Virus record (IMG/VR): IMGVR_UViG_3300035182_002586
Span: 62,001 to 126,000 of that record
DNA: 64,000 nucleotides
Strand: one strand, 5' to 3'
Shown piece after piece: positions 15,010 through 62,274 of this stretch. The notes below the pieces were generated by a model. It had not been told where the DNA came from. It was given only the letters and a program-made list of their open reading frames with translations, and searched no databases. The stretch's first letter is position 1; the number at the start of each line of letters is the position of its first letter. The position numbers and the translations under genes were made by a program.

Positions 15010-15061
15010 GGCCACCCCCATACACCAGGTCGGAACGTTCCGGCGGTGTAGAACGACCGAG

Positions 15062-15789
15062 ATGCCTACCCTGGTCCTCCCTCCCCGCTACACCAGCGAC
15101 TCGCAGCGCCTCTGGAGGGCCGCCATCGACGCCGGGTGGGACGTTCAACGCCTCTCGACTTCCTCGTCCAGGTCTCCGAGAGGGCTCCTCGTGGGGCGCC
15201 CCGTCTTCACGCGATCCTTGGAGGAGGCGTGGGGCTCGTGGGGCCTGCCTTCGTGAAGCCGGCCGAGGAGAAGGGCTTTCAGGCGAAGGTGTACGAGAAC
15301 GGGCGGACGCTGCGGAAGGCGACGGAAGCGTTCGATCCGAACCTACTGGTCCTCGTGAGCGAGCCCGTGTCCTTCGACGTGGAGTACCGCTTCTTCGTCA
15401 TTGGAGGGTCGGACCTCATCCCCATGGGCAAGCGTGTCGTGGCCGGTTCGATCTACATCCGGAACGGGGACATCGCCGAAGTAGACGGCGAGTGGCCGTG
15501 CGATGCAGGGGAGCTGGCGGCGGCACGAGCCTTCGCGGAGTCCGCGCTCTACAGCATCGGGCCGGGGTGGACCACCTACACGCACGGGCTCAGCGGCTTG
15601 AGCGCCCCGTCGTTGCTGCCGGCCGGTCTCGTTCTCGACGTGGGGCGCTTCAACGCCGGGGCCCGCAAGGATCAGTGGGGGATCGTCGAAGCCAACCCGG
15701 CGTGGGGTGCCGGTCTGTGCGGATGTGACACAGCTCCCGTGCTGGAAGTTCTACGGCGAACGACGGTGCCAGCAGTGCCGCAGCCCTAA
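15062..15789 (+). pseudogene. Frameshifted ATP-grasp (DUF4343-like) gene
   Basis: N-term MPTLVLPPRYTSDSQRLWRAA lies in one frame; PAFVKP...SEPVSFDVEYRFFV...VLDVG...IVEANPAWGAG lies in another; frames switch around 15150-15240. Confidence 0.7.
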
Positions 15790-22689: not shown

Positions 22690-23094
22690 ATGCCCACCCC
22701 GCTCCGCGTCTCGTTCGACATTGGCGGGGTGCTCTCCAAGTACCCCGACGTCTTTCGGCCCCTGGTGGACGCGCTCCAGAAGGGGGGCGTCGAGGTCTTC
22801 GTCCTCACGGACATGTCCGACCATGAGCTGAGCACGAGGTTCGTCCGTGATAACGGGTTCGACGTCCCCCCTGAGCGCATCCTCAACGCCGACTACCGCG
22901 AGCACGGGGAGAACTGCAAGGCGCAGCTCATCGAAGCGCACGGCATCCAGCTCCACATCGACGACTTCCCGGGCTACTGCGCCCACACGAAGGCCGTCAG
23001 CCTCTTTGTCTGGCCGAACCCGGACCTTCCGTACTACCACGACGACTTCGTGACCCACGGGGCCGAGGGTAGCTTCGGACGCCGGAAGAAGTAA
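22690..23094 (+). CDS. HAD-superfamily-like protein
   Basis: SFDIGGVL, VLT, K, HIDD motifs. Confidence 0.65.
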   Translation: MPTPLRVSFDIGGVLSKYPDVFRPLVDALQKGGVEVFVLTDMSDHELSTRFVRDNGFDVPPERILNADYREHGENCKAQLIEAHGIQLHIDDFPGYCAHTKAVSLFVWPNPDLPYYHDDFVTHGAEGSFGRRKK

Positions 23095-29820: not shown

Positions 29821-30000
29821 GTGCGGGGTGGGAGAGCCACCCCAAGAGACCGACGGACATAGATTGTCCGTCAGGTGCGGAGTCGAACGAAAAGGTGTTG
29901 ACCGTTCGACCCAAAGGCGTATCGTCGCGGGCGTAGCTCGATAGGTCACCCATCCCGATCCTCGGGCCGGGCCACCTCAGAGCGGATCGGGTTGGTACGA

Positions 30001-30438
30001 ATGCTCAAGACTGCACGAGAGATCGTCGCCCTCGGCGACGAGAGACTTGTCGTCGACTACGCCGTCGAGGCGGATCGACAGATCAAGGCGACCAAGGCGG
30101 AATTCGAAACCGCCAAGGACTTCTTGCGTCTTCGAGCTGCGGACATCGTGGCCCACACGAACGAACCGACGGCACAACTTAAGGGGAGCAGCGGCTCCGT
30201 GGTTGTGTCTTTCCAGAAGCCGCAGGCTGCGGTACGCAAGGGTGTCGATCCGCTCGCCTTCGAGCAGACGATGGACCCTAGCCTCTGGAGCACCTTCTTT
30301 CGCAAGAGGGTCGTCGTGGAGGTCGCCGACGATGCGGAGGCAAAGCTCGCCACGCTCACGCCTGCACAGCGGGCAGCGATGCTGAACCTCATCGAGATCC
30401 GAACGGACGTTCCGCGCGTGACGGTCAAGCAAGGCTGA
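30001..30438 (+). CDS. Hypothetical protein
   Basis: ORF. Confidence 0.6.
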   Translation: MLKTAREIVALGDERLVVDYAVEADRQIKATKAEFETAKDFLRLRAADIVAHTNEPTAQLKGSSGSVVVSFQKPQAAVRKGVDPLAFEQTMDPSLWSTFFRKRVVVEVADDAEAKLATLTPAQRAAMLNLIEIRTDVPRVTVKQG

Positions 30439-30519
30439 CCAGACCAAGGGGTAGCCGTGGTGGCTCGTGGTGACCACAAGCTCGATGTGGGGGGGATCGT
30501 CGCCGGACGTGCGCCCGCT

Positions 30520-31137
30520 CTACCCTCGTCGGAAGCTCGCTGCGTACGTCCAGGCGATCACGCTGGATGTCTCGGTGCCGAAGTTGGCTCCGAAGTCCAC
30601 GGCTCGCAGCCAGAGGCGGCGTGCGTCTTCCACATCTCCCTCTGCGAGGCGCTCGATGGCCTCGGCCCAGAAGTGCAGGGCCATGGTCTCGATCTCCGCA
30701 CCAGGGATTCGCAGCGTGGTGGTGACATCACCAGCAAGTTCAATGGCTTGCTTCGTGTGACCGGCCGCAAGGGCGAGCCAGGCGGAGCACACAGGAGCGG
30801 CCGCGTGTTCCTCGTCGAGGGCCACACCGGTCAGCGGGCTTCCAGCCACGAGGCGCATAGCCTCTTCGAGAGTCGTTTCGATCGCGTCACCAGACGCGAT
30901 CGGCCGTCGGGCCGCGAGGACTTCACGAGTGAGATCGCGAGCTTTGCCTCGCACATCCTCGTGCCCGTCCGCTGCGGCTACCGCGGCGTTCATAGCCCGG
31001 ACCTCTGCGATCACGCTGACGGTCGGGTTCACCACAACCCCCGGAAGTCGACGAACAACCGCCCTCGCGCGGGATGGCTGCGACAAGGGCGGTTGTTCTG
31101 TACGCCCATCGGCATACGGGCGAACGCAGACGTACAA
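30520..31137 (-). CDS. Hypothetical helical protein (start uncertain)
   Basis: Ala-rich ORF. Confidence 0.5.
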   Translation of the reverse strand: MYVCVRPYADGRTEQPPLSQPSRARAVVRRLPGVVVNPTVSVIAEVRAMNAAVAAADGHEDVRGKARDLTREVLAARRPIASGDAIETTLEEAMRLVAGSPLTGVALDEEHAAAPVCSAWLALAAGHTKQAIELAGDVTTTLRIPGAEIETMALHFWAEAIERLAEGDVEDARRLWLRAVDFGANFGTETSSVIAWTYAASFRRG

Positions 31138-31298
31138 CGCGACGAGTCACGGGTCAAGAGGGCCTTCTCTACACGTACGGTTTCGCAGGGGTTTTTCGGT
31201 AGGGTCGTGGGCGTCGGCATGCGTCCGGGATCTTTTTTCAGGGTCGACGATGGATCGGCGTCGTCGTCGCTCTGTACTTACACCGAGCGAGGGATGGC

Positions 31299-44388: not shown

Positions 44389-46107
44389 ATGAAGGTCGAA
44401 GCACGTCTCACGTATGGACAGATCCGTCACGACCAGCCCAAGGACGCCCACCTCGTCCTCTCCCTGACCGCGCCCCCGCTCGCCGAAGAGACCAAGCGCC
44501 CGCCGATCTGCGTGGTCGCAGCCATCGACGTGTCGCCCTCGATGGAGGGCCCGAAGCTCGCCTACGCGAAGCAGTCGGCCATCAAGATGGTCGACCACCT
44601 CCAGCCCGGGGACTACTTCGGGCTCGTGGACTTCGCGCAGAGCGCGAGGCTCGTGATCAAGCCGCAGAAGGTGACGACCGCGTACAAGGACGAAGCGAAG
44701 CGGCAGATCGGCGGGCTCAAGGTCCGGGGCGCCACGAACATCGCGGACGCTCTTCTCGTCTCCCTCGACGCGGCGAACCGAATGGACCTCGGGGCCGAGG
44801 TCATCACCCGCTGCATCCTCTTCACCGACGGGGACGCCAACACCGGGGTCGCCATCACGCCGAAGGCCATCATCGAGCTGCTCTCGAAGAACCTCGGGAT
44901 CGCGACCGTCAGCGCCTTCGGGTACGGCGAAGACGTGAAACAGGAGCTTCTCGCGGACATCGCGAAGGTGGGCAAGGCGAACTACGCCTTCGTCAAGAAC
45001 CCGGACGACGCCCTCAGCGCCTTCGGTAAGGAACTCGGCGGACTGGTCTCCACGTGGGCGACGGGCATCACGGTCGAACTCGCGCCCTCGGCGGACGAGC
45101 ACAGCTTCCGGGCCATCGTCTCCGACGTGGAGGCCGAGGAGGACGTGGCCGGGCACATGACGATCAAGATCCCGGACCTCCTGGCGGAGGAGACGCGGCA
45201 CATCGTCCTCGGGGTGAACCTCGCCCCGCAGAAGGCCGTGGGCCCGCGTGCCGTCAACGTCTTCGAGGCGAAGATCGCCTACGACGTGATCGGAACGGAC
45301 GGGCGCAAGGAGCGCAAGACCATCGAAGCCAAGGCGAAGGTCCAGTTCGTCAAGGCGGGGGACGAGCAGAAGACCCCCACGAAGACGGTCGACGAGATCG
45401 TCGCGCAGGCGCAGATCGTCCGTGCACAGATCGAGGCCGAGCAGGCGGCACAGCAGGGCGACTTCAAGACGGCCGGGGCGGTCTTCCAGAAGACGTCCAA
45501 GAGCCTCCAGGACCGCGGGCACGCGGACCTCGGGAGCGTCGTCAGTCACCTCCACGGGATGTACGCCGACTCGAACTCGTACCGCACCACGTCCGGCAAC
45601 CGCGTCGGCATGCGCACCGCGATGACTCGCGCCGTGGGGGCGTCCGGGCTCGACAGGGACGACGAGGCCCTGCTCAGCTCGGCGCGCTACAACATGTCGA
45701 ACTCGTCGCAGACCTCGATGGTCTCCAGCTTCACCGGGGACACGCCCCCGCCTCCGGCAATCCACGGCGGGACCGCCCTGGCTCCCGTGGCGACCCTCAT
45801 CGCCGCTCCCTCGTGGGTCGGGGGTGTGGCTCCTGCGCAGCCCTCCGCCGGGTGGGTCCAGCCTGCGGGCGGGGTCAGCATCCAGGACCTCCAGAACGCG
45901 ATGGGCGTCGTTCCGTTCAACGGGATGCCGCCGCACCGTCCCGGGTACACGGTCCCCCGCTCCGCCGACGCGCAGCAGCTCCAGGAAGCCGCAGCCGAGG
46001 CGCTGCGGAGGATCGACGCCGACAAGAAAGCCAAGGAAGAGAAGCCGGCCCCGTCGTCGAAGGGTCGCAAGCCCCTCAAGCAGACGAAGAGCCCGACTCG
46101 CTGGTAA
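44389..46107 (+). CDS. von Willebrand factor A domain protein
   Basis: MIDAS DVSPSM, GATNI, LFTDGDAN, FGYG; GGAGG RBS. Confidence 0.88.
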   Translation: MKVEARLTYGQIRHDQPKDAHLVLSLTAPPLAEETKRPPICVVAAIDVSPSMEGPKLAYAKQSAIKMVDHLQPGDYFGLVDFAQSARLVIKPQKVTTAYKDEAKRQIGGLKVRGATNIADALLVSLDAANRMDLGAEVITRCILFTDGDANTGVAITPKAIIELLSKNLGIATVSAFGYGEDVKQELLADIAKVGKANYAFVKNPDDALSAFGKELGGLVSTWATGITVELAPSADEHSFRAIVSDVEAEEDVAGHMTIKIPDLLAEETRHIVLGVNLAPQKAVGPRAVNVFEAKIAYDVIGTDGRKERKTIEAKAKVQFVKAGDEQKTPTKTVDEIVAQAQIVRAQIEAEQAAQQGDFKTAGAVFQKTSKSLQDRGHADLGSVVSHLHGMYADSNSYRTTSGNRVGMRTAMTRAVGASGLDRDDEALLSSARYNMSNSSQTSMVSSFTGDTPPPPAIHGGTALAPVATLIAAPSWVGGVAPAQPSAGWVQPAGGVSIQDLQNAMGVVPFNGMPPHRPGYTVPRSADAQQLQEAAAEALRRIDADKKAKEEKPAPSSKGRKPLKQTKSPTRW

Positions 46108-46155
46108 CACCTGCACCCACCTCTGGCCCGTGCTCTCCGGTGTAGAGCACGGGCC

Positions 46156-46770
46156 ATGGGATACCCTCTCGAAGACGTAGGCGAACGACGCATCCGGGGC
46201 TTGCAGGTCGAGCACGAGATCGCGCTGCGGTTCCGCATGAAGGACTTCGGCGTGATCCTCCCGCCGACGCATCTCCGAGCCAAGACGGAGAGCCGCGAGC
46301 CCTTCGAGTTCGAGATCGACCTGGAGGTCTACCTCGATGGTGTGAACGGGCTCACGGACCCGTCAAAGCGTCGTGTCATCGAGGTGAAGGGGAAGTCAGG
46401 CGCGAAGGACGTGTTCACGACCGTGGACACGTGGCCCCACGAGAATGTGGCGCTCTACAACGTCAACAAGAAGACGCCCCCCTACGCGGTCGTCCTGTAC
46501 AGCACCCACACGAAGCACGCGCTCGTCGTCGTCGCGGGGGATTCCCCCTGGTCGAAGCACTCGATCCACGACAAGAAGCGCAACGCCACCTACGACGTGT
46601 GGACGGCGGAGAACTCCGCCCTGATGACGTTCGACTACTTCCTGGATCGGCTGCGGCGCGAGCTGGCGGATCAGATCCCGCCGCAGAGGATCATCGAGGC
46701 CCCGCCCGTCAGCCGCTACGTGCCGCAGGAACTCTCGCCGGAAGACGAAGAGGCGCTGCTGACGATCTGA
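46156..46770 (+). CDS. Putative PD-(D/E)XK nuclease
   Basis: G...E....; IDL; IEVKGK. Confidence 0.55.
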   Translation: MGYPLEDVGERRIRGLQVEHEIALRFRMKDFGVILPPTHLRAKTESREPFEFEIDLEVYLDGVNGLTDPSKRRVIEVKGKSGAKDVFTTVDTWPHENVALYNVNKKTPPYAVVLYSTHTKHALVVVAGDSPWSKHSIHDKKRNATYDVWTAENSALMTFDYFLDRLRRELADQIPPQRIIEAPPVSRYVPQELSPEDEEALLTI

Positions 46771-46788: not shown

Positions 46789-47385
46789 ATGACCGAGATC
46801 TACATCAGCACGGACATCGAGAGCGACGGTCCCATCCCGGGCCCCTACTCCATGCTCTCATTCGGCTCAGCCGCCTTCCTGGAAGACGGCACCCGGGTCG
46901 GCACCTTCACGCGCAACCTGGAGTTACTTCCAGGTGCATCCCAACACCCAGACACGATGGCGTGGTGGTCAGAGCCCAAGCAGCACCAGGCGTGGGAAAA
47001 CGCACGTCGAACCCCGGTCGATCCAAAGGTCGCCATGGAGGACTATGTGCGGTGGATCGAGGGGCTCCCCGGCATCGAGAAGTCCAAGAACGGAAGTGTG
47101 AAGAACGTGGTTTTCGTAGGCTATCCGGCAGGGTTCGACTTCATGTTTGTCTACTACTACCTCGTATACTTTACGGGAGGTAGCCCATTCTCATTCTCAG
47201 CGCTCGACATGAAGTCGTTTGCCATGGCTGTCCTGGGGACTACGTACCGAGGCACATCCAAGAAGACGATGCCGAAGAAGTGGTTCCCCCCGAACCGACC
47301 CCACACTCATGTAGCTTTGGACGACGCTATTGAGCAGGGGGAACTGTTCATCAACATCCTCAAAGAGGCTTCACAAAGAAGGTAG
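46789..47385 (+). CDS. DEDDh 3'-5' exonuclease
   Basis: [21 protein letters not shown]. Confidence 0.85.
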
Positions 47386-55247: not shown

Positions 55248-55487
55248 GTGAGACCTCTGAGCCTCTTGTCGTTCGCCCTGACTCTGGCCGTGCTCTGTCC
55301 TCAGCAAGAGCCGGAACCGGAACCGGAACCGGAACCGGAACCGGAACCTCCTCCCCCGCCTCCGCGATACAAGCGAGGCTACTACACGTCTGACCCCAAC
55401 CCCAACCCCGTCTACGGCTGCCGGTACTGCCACCGCAACGACGGTGCCCACAACTCGCGCTGCCCCGAGAGAGACCGCCATGGCTGA
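55248..55487 (+). CDS. Small protein with hydrophobic N-terminus and (EP)n repeat
   Basis: GAACCG hexamer tandem at ~55307-55348. Confidence 0.45.
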   Translation: MRPLSLLSFALTLAVLCPQQEPEPEPEPEPEPEPPPPPPRYKRGYYTSDPNPNPVYGCRYCHRNDGAHNSRCPERDRHG

Positions 55488-56058
55488 CATCTACGGCAAG
55501 AACGCGAAGAAGGTGGGCCAAGCCCCGGCTGTCGCGCTGTGCAACCCACGCTTCCCCCACAACGTCGGCGCGGCCGTCCGCGCGGCGAGCTGCTTCGGCG
55601 TCCGTCAGGTCTGGTGGACCGGAGAGCGGATCTCGTTCGCGCTCCAGGTCAAGAAGCGCCTCCCGCGTGAGGAGAGGATGAAGGGCTACCGAGACGTGGA
55701 GCTGCGCCAGTACGACTCGTTCATCGACCAGTTCGAGGACGTGACGCCCGTGGCCGTGGAGCTGCGCCCGAACTCCGAGTCGCTGCCCCTCTTCGAGCAC
55801 CCGAAGAACCCCCTCTACATCTTCGGCCCGGAAGACGGGAGCATCCCCGGGAACATCCTCCGGCACTGCCACCGCTTCGTGGTCATCCCCACGCGTCACT
55901 GCGTGAACCTCGCGGCGGCCGTCTACCTCGTGCTCTACGACCGTCAGGTCAAGATGGCCCCCGACATGACGATCGCGGACGCGCTCGCGGAACGCCGGTT
56001 CGATTTTCCCGAGAACTCCGAGCTGGCCGACGAGCTGGGTCTGGAGAACTCGGGCTGA
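55480..56058 (+). CDS. SpoU/TrmH-family RNA 2'-O-methyltransferase
   Basis: P..PHNVGAAVRAA.CFG, YIFGPEDG, IPT..CVNLAAAV..VLYDR. Confidence 0.88.
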   Translation: MADIYGKNAKKVGQAPAVALCNPRFPHNVGAAVRAASCFGVRQVWWTGERISFALQVKKRLPREERMKGYRDVELRQYDSFIDQFEDVTPVAVELRPNSESLPLFEHPKNPLYIFGPEDGSIPGNILRHCHRFVVIPTRHCVNLAAAVYLVLYDRQVKMAPDMTIADALAERRFDFPENSELADELGLENSG

Positions 56059-57320: not shown

Positions 57321-57722
57321 ATGAGCGACGCTTGGTTGAAAAAGGTGTGGGAGCACATGGATCGTGCATTCGACAGCGTGTGGTGCGCGTTCGACGAGAC
57401 GTTCGTGCCGGGGGAGAGAGCCGAAGAGTCGTCCGTCGGTCGCAACTACCACGTCGTGTCGAACGACGAGACGGCGATCGTCATCACCCTCGACGTCCCC
57501 GGTGTGAAGCGGGCGGACATCGACGTCGAACTCATCGAAGAGAACCGTCTCCGCATCGCGGGCAAGCGTGAAGGACGCGGGAGCTTCGGGTTGAAGCTCC
57601 GTCTCACCGACATCATCGATCCCGACGGGATCTCGGCGACGCTCGCCGATGGTGTCCTCACCATCACCGCGAAGAAGCTCGTACCCAAGGCTCCGGCGGG
57701 CCGGAAGATCCCGATCGGCTAG
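57321..57722 (+). CDS. Hsp20 small heat-shock protein
   Basis: DVPGVKRADIDVEL...ISATLADGVLTIT; GGAGG RBS. Confidence 0.88.
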   Translation: MSDAWLKKVWEHMDRAFDSVWCAFDETFVPGERAEESSVGRNYHVVSNDETAIVITLDVPGVKRADIDVELIEENRLRIAGKREGRGSFGLKLRLTDIIDPDGISATLADGVLTITAKKLVPKAPAGRKIPIG

Positions 57723-60740: not shown

Positions 60741-61229
60741 ATGGGCAATCACGGGCTCGTCGCCGTCTACGCTGGCACGTTCGACCCCCCGACCATCGGG
60801 CACGAGGACCTCATCAAGCGGGCGCTCGGCTTCTGCGAGAAGCTGATCATCGGCATCGGGGTCAACTCGACCAAGACGCCGATCTTCACCGTCGAAGAGC
60901 GCGTCGAGATGCTCCAGAAGCTCGCGGACAACCCCCGGGTCGAGGTCGTGGCCTTCCAGGGGCTCCTCGTCGACTTCGTGCGCAAGAGCGGCGGGAGCAT
61001 GATCATCCGCGGCTTGCGTGCCGTGATGGACTTCGAGTACGAGATGGGCATCGCGCACGCGAACGCCGACCAGGCGCCGACGGTCGAGACCGTCTTCCTC
61101 GCGACCAAGCCGCAGTACTCGTTCATCTCCTCGTCTGTCGTCCGTGAGGTCGCCAAGTACGGCGGCTCCGTGCGACACTACGTCTCCCCGCTCGTCGAAG
61201 AGGCCCTCAGGGCCAAGTTCAGGAAGTAG
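60741..61229 (+). CDS. coaD: Phosphopantetheine adenylyltransferase
   Basis: YAGTFDPPTIGH, IIRGLR...DFEYE, ISSSVVRE. Confidence 0.95.
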   Translation: MGNHGLVAVYAGTFDPPTIGHEDLIKRALGFCEKLIIGIGVNSTKTPIFTVEERVEMLQKLADNPRVEVVAFQGLLVDFVRKSGGSMIIRGLRAVMDFEYEMGIAHANADQAPTVETVFLATKPQYSFISSSVVREVAKYGGSVRHYVSPLVEEALRAKFRK

Positions 61230-61253
61230 TAGTAGTAGGCGTTCTGGTGTCTT

Positions 61254-61327
61254 GCTCCCGTGGCCGAGTGGTTCAGGCGGGCGACTTTAAATCGCCGTCA
61301 ACGTGGGTTCGAGTCCCACCGGGGGCG
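61254..61327 (+). tRNA. Ochre suppressor tRNA, anticodon TTA at 61287-61289
   Basis: Full cloverleaf: GCTCCCG/CGGGGGC, GCC-GAGTGGTTCA-GGC, GGCGA-CTTTAAA-TCGCC, GTGGG-TTCGAGT-CCCAC; discriminator G; no encoded CCA. Confidence 0.85.
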
Positions 61328-61857
61328 CTCCTCTTCAAGTGGTTGCGGACAGATGATTCGGCTACCCCAAGCTGTCTGACTACTTCACTCTTTGAGGTCT
61401 TTGCAATCAAGTCCAGAAGCTCCTCCATCGGAGGCCATGCGGCACGCTTAGCTCTAGGCTTTCGGTGCCCACACGAACGACACTGCACACTGGACTTGGC
61501 GATCGTAGTCCCGCACCGACAGGTCTTGTGTGTGGCCTTCGCGATGCTCCGCCCACAGAACGTTGCGGTCTGTGAGTCGCAGTTAGGACACAGAAACCTC
61601 AAGTTTTCTAGTCTGTGATCACGATTCACACCGTTGATATGGTCCAGCCGAAGCACGAGAGGTTTTCCTCCCCACTCGGGCCCAAGCTGACAGCCAACAC
61701 AGTGGGATGTGTCCAGGGCCAGGCGCGCGATAGCGTTGCGCACGTAGGCTGCCCCTCCACCAGAAGCAGAGGGTCGACCTAGAGCACGAAGAATTGCAGT
61801 GACACTAGCGTGCTCTCGCACAAGCACCACCAGGGTGTCGTCAGAGATGGGTTACAT
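61273..61857 (-). CDS. HNH endonuclease overlapping the tRNA antisense; upstream ATG at 61857 followed by in-frame TAA (alternative GTG start 61830)
   Basis: LRLDHINGVNRDHRLENLRFLCPNCDSQT; C-terminal HTH. Confidence 0.75.
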
Positions 61858-61895
61858 CGAGTTTAGTGGCGGTATAAATGACCTACTAAACTCGA
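61857..61895. repeat. 11-bp-arm inverted repeat at the start of the HNH gene
   Basis: tcgagtttagt-N17-actaaactcga. Confidence 0.75.
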
Positions 61896-61923
61896 CCCTC
61901 TCGATCAGGTGTACCATCCCCCC

Positions 61924-62274
61924 ATGCAGGATCGAAGCTACCTCGCCGATCTCACCGAGGCACAGCTCAAGGGTGTCGCAGGTGCACTGGAGGCGCGGAT
62001 CAGGGACTCCAAGAAGAAGGCCACGCAGGCCCTCTCCAAAGACCCCGAGCTGATGAAGAGCTGGATCGCCACAATGTCGGCGGTCCCCGCTACGACCTCA
62101 GAGGAAGAAGACGCGAAGGAACTGGTCCGCAAGGCCCGCGAGGACCGTCGACTAGCCTTCGAGAAAGCCCTCGTCGAGCACCCGGAGGCGTACGTCCTCT
62201 ACCACATGGCGAACTACCTCGTCGGTCTTAGCGAGGCCGTCCGCAAGGAGCGGAGCGAGAGGGCTCGCAAGTGA
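61924..62274 (+). CDS. Hypothetical protein
   Basis: GGTGTA 10 nt upstream. Confidence 0.65.
   Translation: MQDRSYLADLTEAQLKGVAGALEARIRDSKKKATQALSKDPELMKSWIATMSAVPATTSEEEDAKELVRKAREDRRLAFEKALVEHPEAYVLYHMANYLVGLSEAVRKERSERARK

What the first reader, a model, noticed from the sequence alone, without database searches (positions are those of the whole stretch)
61227..61857. Ochre-suppressor tRNA (anticodon UUA) flanked by four tandem TAG stops and an HNH gene that begins ATG-TAA
Seen in sequence: an intact cloverleaf at 61254-61327 has anticodon TTA. The upstream coaD ends TAG-TAG-TAG-TAG. The overlapping antisense HNH gene has an in-frame ATG-TAA-CCC-ATC-TCT-GAC-GAC (M*PISDDTLVVLVRE), which reads like a natural N-terminus. 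Established: UUA anticodons can read UAA and, by wobble, UAG; described phage recoding mostly involves TAG or TGA, not TAA. Inference: this could be a phage-controlled readthrough switch. TAA is a rare stop here (15789, 23094, 46107, 53596). The TAA at 23094 is backed by a TAG two codons later, and readthrough at 46107 would fuse the vWA protein in frame to the downstream nuclease. The amino acid charged cannot be determined (G73 discriminator, short variable loop, Tyr/Cys-like D-loop).
Basis: partly seen in the sequence, partly recalled or inferred. Interest (0 to 1): 0.85.

Follow-up and report, generated by a model that had tools for sequence, protein, structure and literature searches.

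The report
Conserved ochre-suppressor tRNA in huge phage
A 529-kb uncultured phage carries a real, evolutionarily conserved tRNA gene whose anticodon reads the stop codon UAA, but the genome otherwise uses UAA as a normal stop, and the neighbouring "ATG-TAA" nuclease gene is an eroding selfish gene, not part of a designed read-through switch.

Summary
The sequence observations hold. ARAGORN and Rfam both call an intact tRNA at 61254-61328 with anticodon UUA. coaD ends TAG x4. The antisense HNH frame reads ATG-TAA-PISDD.

The window is part of a 529-kb IMG/VR phage contig. A related phage (L013/L014) has the same coaD-tRNA-HNH order and the same UUA anticodon. The tRNA is 93% identical between the two, against 68-81% for the flanking genes, so the suppressor is conserved and not a recent accident.

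The proposed switch is not supported:
- In the relative, HNH codon 2 is Glu (GAG), coaD ends with a single TAA, and the vWA orthologue ends TGA.
- The window's HNH also lacks 39 codons that all 18 aligned homologues keep.
- In 95 kb of this genome (18%), no gene is interrupted by TAA.
- TAG x4 varies in length between strains.

The HNH belongs to a homing-endonuclease family found in phage tRNA gene regions (78 of 79 loci). Its closest members sit beside suppressor tRNAs, mostly amber.

Best reading: a standard-code huge phage keeping a probably weak ochre suppressor within a translation module (PTH2, ArgRS, at least 33 tRNAs). That tRNA may buffer the nonsense codon in the decaying HNH gene. 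Recoding in the unseen 82% of the genome is not excluded.

The parts
60741..61229 (+). coaD-like phosphopantetheine adenylyltransferase (162 aa). Co-directional with the tRNA, which starts 15 nt after the last TAG repeat and is probably co-transcribed with it.
   Evidence: PF01467 at 1.2e-25. 78% aa identity to the orthologue in L013. No promoter-like site was found between coaD and the tRNA.
61227..61238 (+). (TAG)4: the coaD stop plus three extra in-frame TAGs, a length-variable trinucleotide repeat.
   Evidence: Sequence. A strain in run X4 lacks 6 nt here. The relative L013 has a single TAA instead.
61254..61328 (+). tRNA with anticodon UUA (61287-61289), anticodon loop C-U-U-U-A-A-A, discriminator G73, 6-nt variable loop, class-II-like D arm, no encoded CCA.
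   Evidence: ARAGORN. Rfam 55.4 bits. Cloverleaf minimum-energy fold. 70/75 nt identical to L013 with 17/17 in the anticodon arm. Identical in contigs of two other samples.
61273..61857 (-). Free-standing HNH homing-endonuclease gene. It overlaps the tRNA's 3' part in antisense. The ancestral ATG is at 61857 and the first downstream start is GTG at 61830.
   Evidence: phrog_10822 at 1e-30. 1328 homologues. Alignments A1 and A5. GC 57% against 64% in the flanks.
61852..61857 (-). ATG-TAA: the ancestral start codon followed by an ochre codon that replaces a Glu codon.
   Evidence: Translation. The orthologue has ATG GAG. The paralogue L108:14629-15093 starts M-E-K.
61700..61704 (-). Junction of a 117-nt (39-codon) in-frame deletion, specific to this copy of the HNH gene.
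   Evidence: DNA alignment with L013. The segment is present in all 18 aligned homologues. It includes a helix with pLDDT 94 and nearly invariant Leu residues in the model of P0002.
61858..61900 (-). Stable hairpin whose 3' arm ends right at the HNH ATG. It may limit translation or act as a terminator.
   Evidence: -14.3 kcal/mol, z -3.6. The arms differ but stay complementary in L013.
61909..62274 (+). Conserved 121-aa gene of unknown function flanking the HNH. Its orthologue is present in L013.
   Evidence: 64% aa identity. No Pfam match.
46105..46156 (+). TAA stop of the vWA gene, then a 13-bp hairpin, then the ATG of the next gene in the same frame. This is an ordinary gene boundary, not a fusion site.
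   Evidence: The vWA orthologue in L014 ends TGA.
55444..56058 (+). SpoU-family RNA 2'-O-methyltransferase (context: RNA/translation-related neighbourhood).
   Evidence: PF00588 at 2.8e-16.

Best explanation
This is a genuine phage tRNA gene of the ochre-suppressor type, maintained by selection in a lineage of GC-rich huge phages that still use the standard genetic code.

Likely mechanism:
1. The tRNA is transcribed with coaD and cut out by host RNase P and 3' processing.
2. It receives CCA post-transcriptionally, because CCA is not encoded.
3. Its A36-A37-A38 loop makes it a substrate for i6A37 modification.
4. It is charged by an unidentified synthetase.
5. It competes with release factors at UAA and, by U34 wobble, more weakly at UAG. 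The result is low-level read-through.

The cost is small because TAA is the rarest stop in this genome.

The tRNA belongs to a family of phage suppressor tRNAs, mostly CUA. These sit beside a family of HNH homing endonucleases specialised for tRNA gene regions. In this clade they lie near a peptidyl-tRNA hydrolase (PTH2) gene.

The adjacent HNH gene is a selfish element in decay: Glu2 became TAA, and a 39-codon deletion followed or preceded it. Any residual expression would come from the GTG nine codons downstream or from suppression by the neighbouring tRNA. The tRNA may have allowed that nonsense codon to persist.

The TAG x4 run, the vWA 'fusion' and the ATG-TAA are lineage-specific accidents, not parts of a switch.

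Shown here: the tRNA's structure, anticodon, conservation and synteny; the family context; the absence of in-frame TAA in 95 kb; the HNH lesions.

Inferred: transcription, charging, suppression efficiency, and the selective benefit.
For: Intact tRNA.

Same anticodon in the syntenic relative L013/L014. tRNA identity is 93%, against 81% for coaD, 70% for HNH and 68% for the 121-aa gene. P(<=5 differences in 75 nt) is 0.0025 at the coaD rate. All 5 differences fall at position 3 (U.G to C-G), the D loop, the variable loop and T-loop positions 59/60.

The sequence is identical in contigs from two independent microbial-mat samples.

Standard code: 84 genes end TGA 48, TAG 31, TAA 5. Only one TAA has coding signal on both sides, against 3 for TAG and 7 for TGA, and all of these are gene boundaries.

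Non-conservation of the proposed targets.

HNH family:
- 78 of 79 IMG/VR loci have tRNAs within 2.5 kb, and 11 have suppressor tRNAs.
- All 6 closest metagenomic loci have a suppressor tRNA overlapping the HNH 3' end.
- The shared tRNA backbone is shown.

Translation module:
- PTH2 lies near the tRNA in this phage and in 5 relatives.
- ArgRS.
- At least 33 ordinary tRNAs lie 15 kb away.

Precedents for a TTA suppressor in a standard-code phage: PMC7886860 (crAss-like OKSC01000115) and PMC8386662 (phiKp24).

That UUA-anticodon suppressors read UAA and UAG, and depend on A37 modification, is established E. coli genetics (Eggertsson and Soll 1988, cited from my own knowledge).
Against: - No direct evidence of expression, charging or suppression.
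- The amino acid is unknown. G73 with a Ser-like class-II D arm but a short variable loop fits no standard bacterial identity set.
- 82% of the genome was not examined, so in-frame TAA codons in late genes cannot be excluded.
- 3 of 5 TAA-terminated genes have a second in-frame stop within 8 codons, against 11 of 63 for other genes (p = 0.055, threshold chosen post hoc). This hints at appreciable read-through.
- A benefit that would explain long-term conservation of a weak suppressor is not identified.
Confidence: 0.55

Rival explanations
1. One reading: a phage-controlled read-through switch. The suppressor tRNA gates translation of the overlapping HNH gene through its codon-2 TAA, and extends or fuses selected TAA-terminated proteins. 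Tandem TAGs protect coaD.
For: The ATG at 61857 is the ancestral start, and its upstream context is conserved in L013. The TAA aligns with Glu in the orthologue and the paralogue. The gene lies physically next to the only ochre suppressor. Backup stops follow 3 of 5 TAA genes.
Against: Nothing in the model is conserved in the one relative that shares the tRNA. That relative has HNH codon 2 GAG, coaD ending in a single TAA with the next in-frame stop also TAA, and vWA ending TGA. The window's HNH has a unique 39-codon deletion. TAG x4 varies between strains. The vWA spacer has a hairpin and its own ATG.
Confidence: 0.13
2. Partial genetic-code change: UAA (perhaps with UAG) is decoded as an amino acid in a subset of genes, for example late genes, in the unseen 82% of the genome. 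This would parallel TAG/TGA-recoded phages. The HNH codon is the first visible case.
For: A conserved suppressor. TAA is the rarest stop, which is the expected precondition. The phage has its own translation genes: ArgRS, PTH2 and at least 33 tRNAs. Recoded phages keep standard code in early genes (10.1101/2021.08.26.457843). TTA suppressors occur at the GC-rich end of the suppressor-bearing loci.
Against: There is no interrupted gene in 95 kb, about 84 genes. TAA ends 5 genes there, and in the relative it ends coaD, the gene just upstream of the tRNA. Surveys found no TAA-recoded phages (PMC13037316; 10.1101/2021.08.26.457843). Relatives carrying CUA still end neighbouring genes with TAG.
Confidence: 0.12
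3. The tRNA is functionless cargo: a mutated tRNA that hitch-hikes with, or merely serves as the target of, the homing endonuclease cassette, and is neither charged nor used.
For: The HNH family is tied to tRNA genes, and homing co-converts flanking tRNA genes (PMC2330249). The tRNA's combination of features is odd: a class-II-like D arm, a short variable loop and G73. No target codons were found.
Against: The tRNA is the best-conserved element of the locus, and its substitutions fall only at structurally tolerant positions. Its anticodon loop is the optimal C-U-NNN-A-A type. It scores a strong 55 bits. The HNH decays while the tRNA does not.
Confidence: 0.12
4. The tRNA acts in host-phage conflict rather than in phage gene decoding. 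It might disturb termination of host genes, or stand in as a decoy or replacement against host anticodon nucleases.
For: Only circumstantial. Suppressor tRNAs recur in many unrelated phages of this HNH census, and this phage invests heavily in translation genes.
Against: No defence or anti-defence gene link was found. A UUA anticodon matches no host tRNA that a nuclease is known to target. No tool result bears on this directly.
Confidence: 0.05

Closest known systems
TTA-suppressor tRNA in a standard-code crAss-like phage (OKSC01000115), called 'suppressor pre-emergence' by Yutin et al. 2021 (PMC7886860); also tRNA-Sup-TTA of Klebsiella phage phiKp24 (PMC8386662)
   Same: A phage tRNA gene with anticodon TTA in a genome that shows no TAA reassignment.
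   Different: The crAss case is a single-genome point mutation of tRNA-Gln. Here the anticodon is conserved between two phages that differ by 19-32% in flanking DNA. The backbone is not Gln-like. The genome is a 529-kb, 64% GC environmental phage, and one in-frame TAA sits next door.
Suppressor tRNAs of stop-codon-recoded phages: Lak, crAss-like and 'gemstone' clades (Borges et al., 10.1101/2021.08.26.457843)
   Same: A phage-encoded suppressor tRNA, a large genome, and accompanying translation genes.
   Different: Those phages recode TAG or TGA and show many in-frame stops in late genes. Here the codon is TAA, and no interrupted gene was found in 95 kb.
Homing endonucleases of phage tRNA gene regions: T4 SegB (PMC2330249) and T5 F-TflI/II/IV (cited there)
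   Same: A free-standing endonuclease gene wedged between or against tRNA genes. The T5-like 'hegA' HNH genes are sequence homologues. 78 of 79 family loci lie among tRNAs.
   Different: SegB is GIY-YIG, not HNH. This copy overlaps a suppressor tRNA in antisense. It carries an ochre codon and a 39-codon deletion, and its activity is untested.
E. coli ochre suppressors supC (tRNA-Tyr UUA) and supG/supL (tRNA-Lys UUA) (from my own knowledge)
   Same: The same anticodon, and the same C-U-U-U-A-A-A anticodon loop as supC. These are expected to read UAA and, more weakly, UAG.
   Different: Those are laboratory mutants of host tRNAs with known identity. This is a natural, conserved phage gene of unknown amino-acid identity. 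The most similar annotated sense tRNA in the GenBank phage search is tRNA-Lys(UUU) of jumbo phage Phosso, about 80% identical over 62 nt.

Membership tests
Canonical elongator tRNA (Rfam RF00005) | Cloverleaf with conserved U8, A14, G18-G19, U33 and a G53-T54-T55-C56 T loop, scoring above the family's gathering threshold | tested here: met
   55.4 bits against 29, full-length match. ARAGORN call. Cloverleaf minimum-energy fold.
Ochre-suppressor tRNA | Anticodon 5'-UUA-3' in a 7-nt loop with U33 and purine 37 | tested here: met
   The loop is C-U-U-U-A-A-A, with the anticodon at 61287-61289.
Ochre-suppressor tRNA | The anticodon is maintained in relatives, i.e. it is not a one-off mutation or an assembly error | tested here: met
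   L013 and L014 have TTA. Contigs in runs X2 and X3 are identical. The state in the roughly 10%-diverged X4 strain could not be read.
Ochre-suppressor tRNA | Is aminoacylated and inserts an amino acid at UAA in vivo | not testable with these tools
   Needs a reporter assay, tRNA-seq or proteomics. Identity elements are ambiguous.
Stop-codon-recoded phage (alternative genetic code) | Conserved genes interrupted in frame by the reassigned stop, with coding signal continuing across it | tested here: not met
   In 95 kb, only the vWA/next-gene boundary has coding signal on both sides of a TAA, against 3 such cases for TAG and 7 for TGA. 82% of the genome was not seen.
Stop-codon-recoded phage (alternative genetic code) | The reassigned codon is no longer used as a terminator | tested here: not met
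   TAA ends 5 genes here. It also ends coaD, the gene just upstream of the tRNA, in L013.
Stop-codon-recoded phage (alternative genetic code) | A partner release factor or dedicated synthetase | tested here: inconclusive
   An ArgRS gene lies about 10 kb from the tRNA. No release factor turned up among the ORFs scanned against Pfam in the 95 kb; not every ORF was scanned. The phage also has ordinary tRNA-Arg genes.
Programmed stop-codon read-through gene (Q-beta A1 type) | A leaky stop at a conserved position, followed by a conserved in-frame extension | tested here: not met
   The vWA orthologue ends TGA, the coaD stop differs, and HNH codon 2 is Glu in the relatives.
HNH homing endonuclease of phage tRNA regions (phrog_10822 / T5-like hegA) | HNH beta-beta-alpha-metal core (DH...N...N) with two CxxC pairs | tested here: met
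   D70, H71, N83, N90, C51/C54 and C88/C91 are invariant columns. phrog_10822 at 1e-30.
HNH homing endonuclease of phage tRNA regions (phrog_10822 / T5-like hegA) | Free-standing gene next to tRNA genes, with a patchy distribution | tested here: met
   78 of 79 loci have tRNAs within 2.5 kb. More distant coaD loci have neither the tRNA nor the HNH.
HNH homing endonuclease of phage tRNA regions (phrog_10822 / T5-like hegA) | An intact reading frame with the full domain set (an active copy) | tested here: not met
   An ochre codon at position 2 and a 39-codon deletion that removes a conserved helix. Mean pLDDT is 78.6 for this copy and 88.6 for the intact orthologue.

The most novel reading that the evidence does not exclude
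This lineage of GC-rich huge phages is at an early or partial stage of reassigning UAA. The conserved UUA tRNA decodes in-frame TAA codons in genes that lie in the unexamined 82% of the genome, and the HNH codon-2 TAA is the first visible example. This would be the first phage, and the first bacterial-type system, known to recode TAA.
Probability: 0.12. Interest if true: 0.85.

Novelty: new member of a known kind. Interest (0 to 1): 0.45.

Why it matters
TAA is the one stop codon for which the phage surveys read here found no reassignment, and I know of none in bacteria. A natural, selectively maintained UAA-reading tRNA in a phage that still terminates at TAA is the 'ambiguous intermediate' that code-change theory predicts. 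It also comes with a possible first tolerated in-frame TAA.

The work further shows that one family of homing endonucleases is tightly tied to phage tRNA genes, and that its closest members are tied to suppressor tRNAs. This suggests how suppressor tRNAs could spread between phages.

As it stands, the finding is a well-documented member of a known class (a phage suppressor tRNA beside a tRNA-region homing endonuclease), not a new mechanism.

Tried and rejected
- Near-identity search of the locus in GenBank phages: no match.
- coaD and the 244-aa neighbour as probes in IMG/VR: only the source contig was found.
- coaD in metagenome contigs: relatives at 55% identity or less, none with a tRNA nearby.
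- tRNA patterns in IMG/VR, with and without a fixed anticodon: only the source contig.
- tRNA anticodon-arm pattern in 185,579 species genomes: one chance hit inside a coding gene, so no cellular source was identified.
- Amino-acid identity:
  - The best matches to annotated GenBank phage tRNAs are tRNA-Lys(UUU) of phage Phosso and a DLP3 'tRNA-Glu' that is really CUA.
  - None of the phage's own 33 tRNAs is more than 62% identical.
  - The nearest neighbours among 635 phage tRNAs are other suppressors.
  - The identity remains unresolved.
- A complete relative genome for the CUA branch: the 465-kb record carrying P0020 is not in the phage collection.
- An apparent in-frame TAG at 30522 (minus strand): the downstream half looks like the antisense of a plus-strand gene. 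Not pursued.
- Fold search of the HNH model: only weak HNH and HTH domain matches.
- Considered and rejected:
  - bldA-type tRNA-Leu(UAA), because the loop register gives UUA, not UAA.
  - A Y-RNA/Ro60 link, because the window's vWA protein is not Ro60-like.
Full report
**Observation**

- ARAGORN finds one tRNA in the window, at 61254-61328 (+), labelled tRNA-Stop, with anticodon tta at 61287-61289.
- Rfam's tRNA model matches end to end at 55.4 bits, against a gathering score of 29. The minimum-energy fold is a cloverleaf.
- The upstream gene (60741-61229) is a cytidylyltransferase-family coaD (PF01467, 1.2e-25). It ends TAG TAG TAG TAG.
- On the other strand, an HNH endonuclease ORF runs 61830 to 61273 and ends inside the tRNA (phrog_10822, 1e-30). 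Its frame extends upstream to ATG-TAA-CCC-ATC-TCT-GAC.
- TAA is the rarest stop codon.

**Source**

The window is bases 62001-126000 of IMGVR_UViG_3300035182_002586, a 528,957-bp viral contig with 64% GC. It has no near relative in GenBank phages.

Contigs from two independent microbial-mat runs carry the coaD-tRNA-HNH stretch with zero differences. A groundwater run holds a strain about 10% diverged, in which 6 nt of the TAG repeat are missing.

**The tRNA is conserved**

The closest HNH homologue (P0002) lies on two Logan contigs, L013 and L014. They have the same gene order: coaD, tRNA, antisense HNH, then the 121-aa gene. ARAGORN calls the same anticodon, tta, there.

| Element | Identity between the two phages |
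|---|---|
| tRNA | 93% (70/75 nt) |
| coaD | 81% nt |
| HNH | 70% nt |
| 121-aa gene | 68% nt |

The anticodon stem-loop is 17/17 identical. The five tRNA differences lie at position 3 (U.G becomes C-G), the D loop, the variable loop and T-loop positions 59/60. The probability of so few changes at the coaD rate is 0.0025.

**The proposed switch is not conserved**

In the relative:
- coaD ends with a single TAA just upstream of the tRNA, and the next in-frame stop is again TAA.
- The vWA orthologue ends TGA.
- The HNH gene begins ATG GAG CCT ATC ACG GAC.

A second HNH paralogue in this same genome begins M-E-K-Y-T-K, colinear with M-TAA-P-I-S-D. The TAA therefore replaces an ancestral Glu codon.

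The window's copy also lacks 117 nt (39 codons) that all 18 aligned homologues retain. In the AlphaFold model of the intact orthologue, that segment holds a confident helix with nearly invariant leucines next to the HNH core. The deleted copy models less well: mean pLDDT is 78.6 against 88.6.

A GTG nine codons downstream would give an N-terminus as long as that of homologue P0015, so suppression is not even required for some expression.

**No sign of TAA as a sense codon**

Using three collection scans, I extended the sequence to contig 53219-148214, which is 95 kb or 18% of the genome.
- Among 84 confidently coding ORFs, the stops are TGA 48, TAG 31 and TAA 5.
- Only one TAA has coding-type base composition in the same frame on both sides: the vWA/next-gene junction. 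The equivalent counts are 3 for TAG and 7 for TGA, and all are ordinary boundaries between neighbouring genes.
- The vWA spacer contains a 13-bp hairpin (-25.7 kcal/mol) that ends at a separate ATG.
- Three of five TAA-terminated genes have another stop within 8 codons, against 11 of 63 for other genes. This is suggestive only (p = 0.055, threshold chosen after seeing the data).

**Context of the HNH and the tRNA**

The HNH has 1328 homologues. In IMG/VR, 78 of 79 homologous loci have tRNA genes within 2.5 kb, usually inside large tRNA arrays. Eleven carry suppressor tRNAs: ten CTA and one TTA, the latter in L022, a 312-kb contig with the closest IMG/VR homologue.

All six closest metagenomic loci have a suppressor tRNA overlapping the HNH 3' end. 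It is in antisense in the window, L013 and L019, and in sense in L015-L017. In the sense cases, the conserved protein ending R-V-V-E-G-G-G-F is simply the translated tRNA D arm, and the ORF stops in the anticodon loop.

The CTA tRNAs of L015-L017 are class II with G73. They share the acceptor stem, the D arm, the A-C-T-Y-T-A-A-A-T-C loop context and the T arm with the window's tRNA. The window's tRNA therefore looks like a member of that family with C34 changed to U and the long variable arm lost. Those CTA-bearing phages still end neighbouring genes with TAG.

This matches the known biology of homing endonucleases in phage tRNA regions. T4 SegB recognises the T-loop motif and drags flanking tRNA genes along (PMC2330249), and T5-like hegA genes are sequence homologues.

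**Translation module**

A PTH2 peptidyl-tRNA hydrolase gene lies within 0.2-3.4 kb of the HNH/tRNA pair in this phage and in five relatives. Also present in this phage:
- an arginyl-tRNA synthetase about 10 kb away;
- an array of at least 33 ordinary tRNAs for 18 amino acids, 15 kb away;
- a SpoU RNA methylase 5 kb upstream.

None of the phage's own tRNAs is more than 62% identical to the suppressor. The amino acid it would carry remains unknown. The closest annotated sense tRNA is tRNA-Lys(UUU) of jumbo phage Phosso. The nearest neighbours overall are other phage suppressors.

**Interpretation**

The best-supported reading (about 0.55) has three parts:
- This is a real, selectively maintained ochre-suppressor tRNA in a standard-code huge phage.
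- It probably gives weak read-through of the rarest stop codon.
- It sits beside a decaying homing endonuclease whose early nonsense codon it may partly mask.

It parallels the 'suppressor pre-emergence' described for one crAss-like phage (PMC7886860). Phage surveys have found no TAA recoding (10.1101/2021.08.26.457843; PMC13037316).

Rivals:
- true TAA recoding elsewhere in the genome (0.12);
- inert cargo of the endonuclease cassette (0.12);
- a role in host conflict (0.05).

The decisive computation is a whole-contig comparison of gene calls with and without TAA as a stop. The decisive experiment is a TAA reporter with this tRNA in a laboratory host.

**Verdict**

This is a new member of a known kind, of moderate interest.

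Noticed in passing
Just outside the window: L004:3928-4329 (about window coordinate 64682-65083, minus strand); also L013:1235-1558, L015:1883-2227, L016:2461-2844, L017:606-935, L019:3787-4110: A PTH2-type peptidyl-tRNA hydrolase gene lies within 0.2-3.4 kb of the HNH/suppressor-tRNA pair in this phage and in five relatives with 49-64% GC. This linkage between a suppressor tRNA and a peptidyl-tRNA hydrolase is conserved and unexplained.
   Followed up: partly
L108:11918-20228 (contig 138785-147095, about 15 kb beyond the suppressor): An array of at least 33 ordinary tRNA genes for 18 amino acids; no Ser or His tRNA was seen so far. A truncated HNH paralogue (L108:14629-15093) lies between tRNA-Asp and tRNA-Ala. 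The suppressor sits apart from this array.
   Followed up: partly
L105:5104-6954 (contig about 133556-135406): A full-length arginyl-tRNA synthetase gene (PF00750 at 7e-80, plus a DALR domain) lies between the suppressor tRNA and the tRNA array. A Clp protease and a metallophosphoesterase lie inside the array region.
   Followed up: no
L015:3893-3969 and L017:2890-2967: Directly upstream of the HNH gene in two CUA-bearing relatives lies a second tRNA-like gene. Its anticodon loop appears to be 8 nt long and contains C-U-A-G; ARAGORN calls are odd ('???' and Leu at position 37). It could be a quadruplet or amber decoder.
   Followed up: no
L015:4698-4788, L016:3737-3823, L017:3659-3741 and the C-termini of P0003, P0009, P0016, P0018, P0020, P0022 and P0027: Many HNH ORFs of this family run into a downstream class-II suppressor tRNA on the same strand. 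Their 'conserved' C-terminus R-V-V-E-G-G-G-F is the translated D arm, and the stop codon is formed within the anticodon loop (TAA or TAG from C-U-A-A/G).
   Followed up: partly
L022:2916-3007 (IMGVR_UViG_3300048599_000213, 312 kb): A second, independent ochre-suppressor-type tRNA: 92 nt, class II, A73, encoded CCA, anticodon TTA. It lies next to the closest IMG/VR homologue of the HNH. The three TTA loci have 60-64% GC, and the CTA loci have 30-62%.
   Followed up: partly
L102:58-131 (Stenotrophomonas phage DLP_3, MT110073.1, 49181-49254): The gene annotated tRNA-Glu in this cultured phage has anticodon CTA by ARAGORN, i.e. an amber-suppressor type. Its anticodon arm is almost the same as the window's tRNA.
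   Followed up: partly
window 61858-61900 (minus strand): A hairpin (-14.3 kcal/mol, z -3.6) ends exactly at the HNH ATG. In L013 the arms differ in sequence but remain complementary. This is reminiscent of translational occlusion in other homing endonuclease genes.
   Followed up: partly
window 61225-61238: The TAG repeat is polymorphic: a strain in groundwater run X4 has 6 nt fewer.
   Followed up: partly
window 29977-31146 (minus strand): Two long open frames are joined by a TAG at 30522, with coding-like composition on both sides. The downstream half may only be the antisense of the plus-strand gene 29992-30438.
   Followed up: no
window 15052-15789, 55444-56058, 46789-47385, 57321-57722: Accessory genes in the window: an R2K-clade ATP-grasp protein, a SpoU RNA methyltransferase, an Rv2179c-like 3'-5' exoribonuclease and an Hsp20 chaperone.
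   Followed up: no
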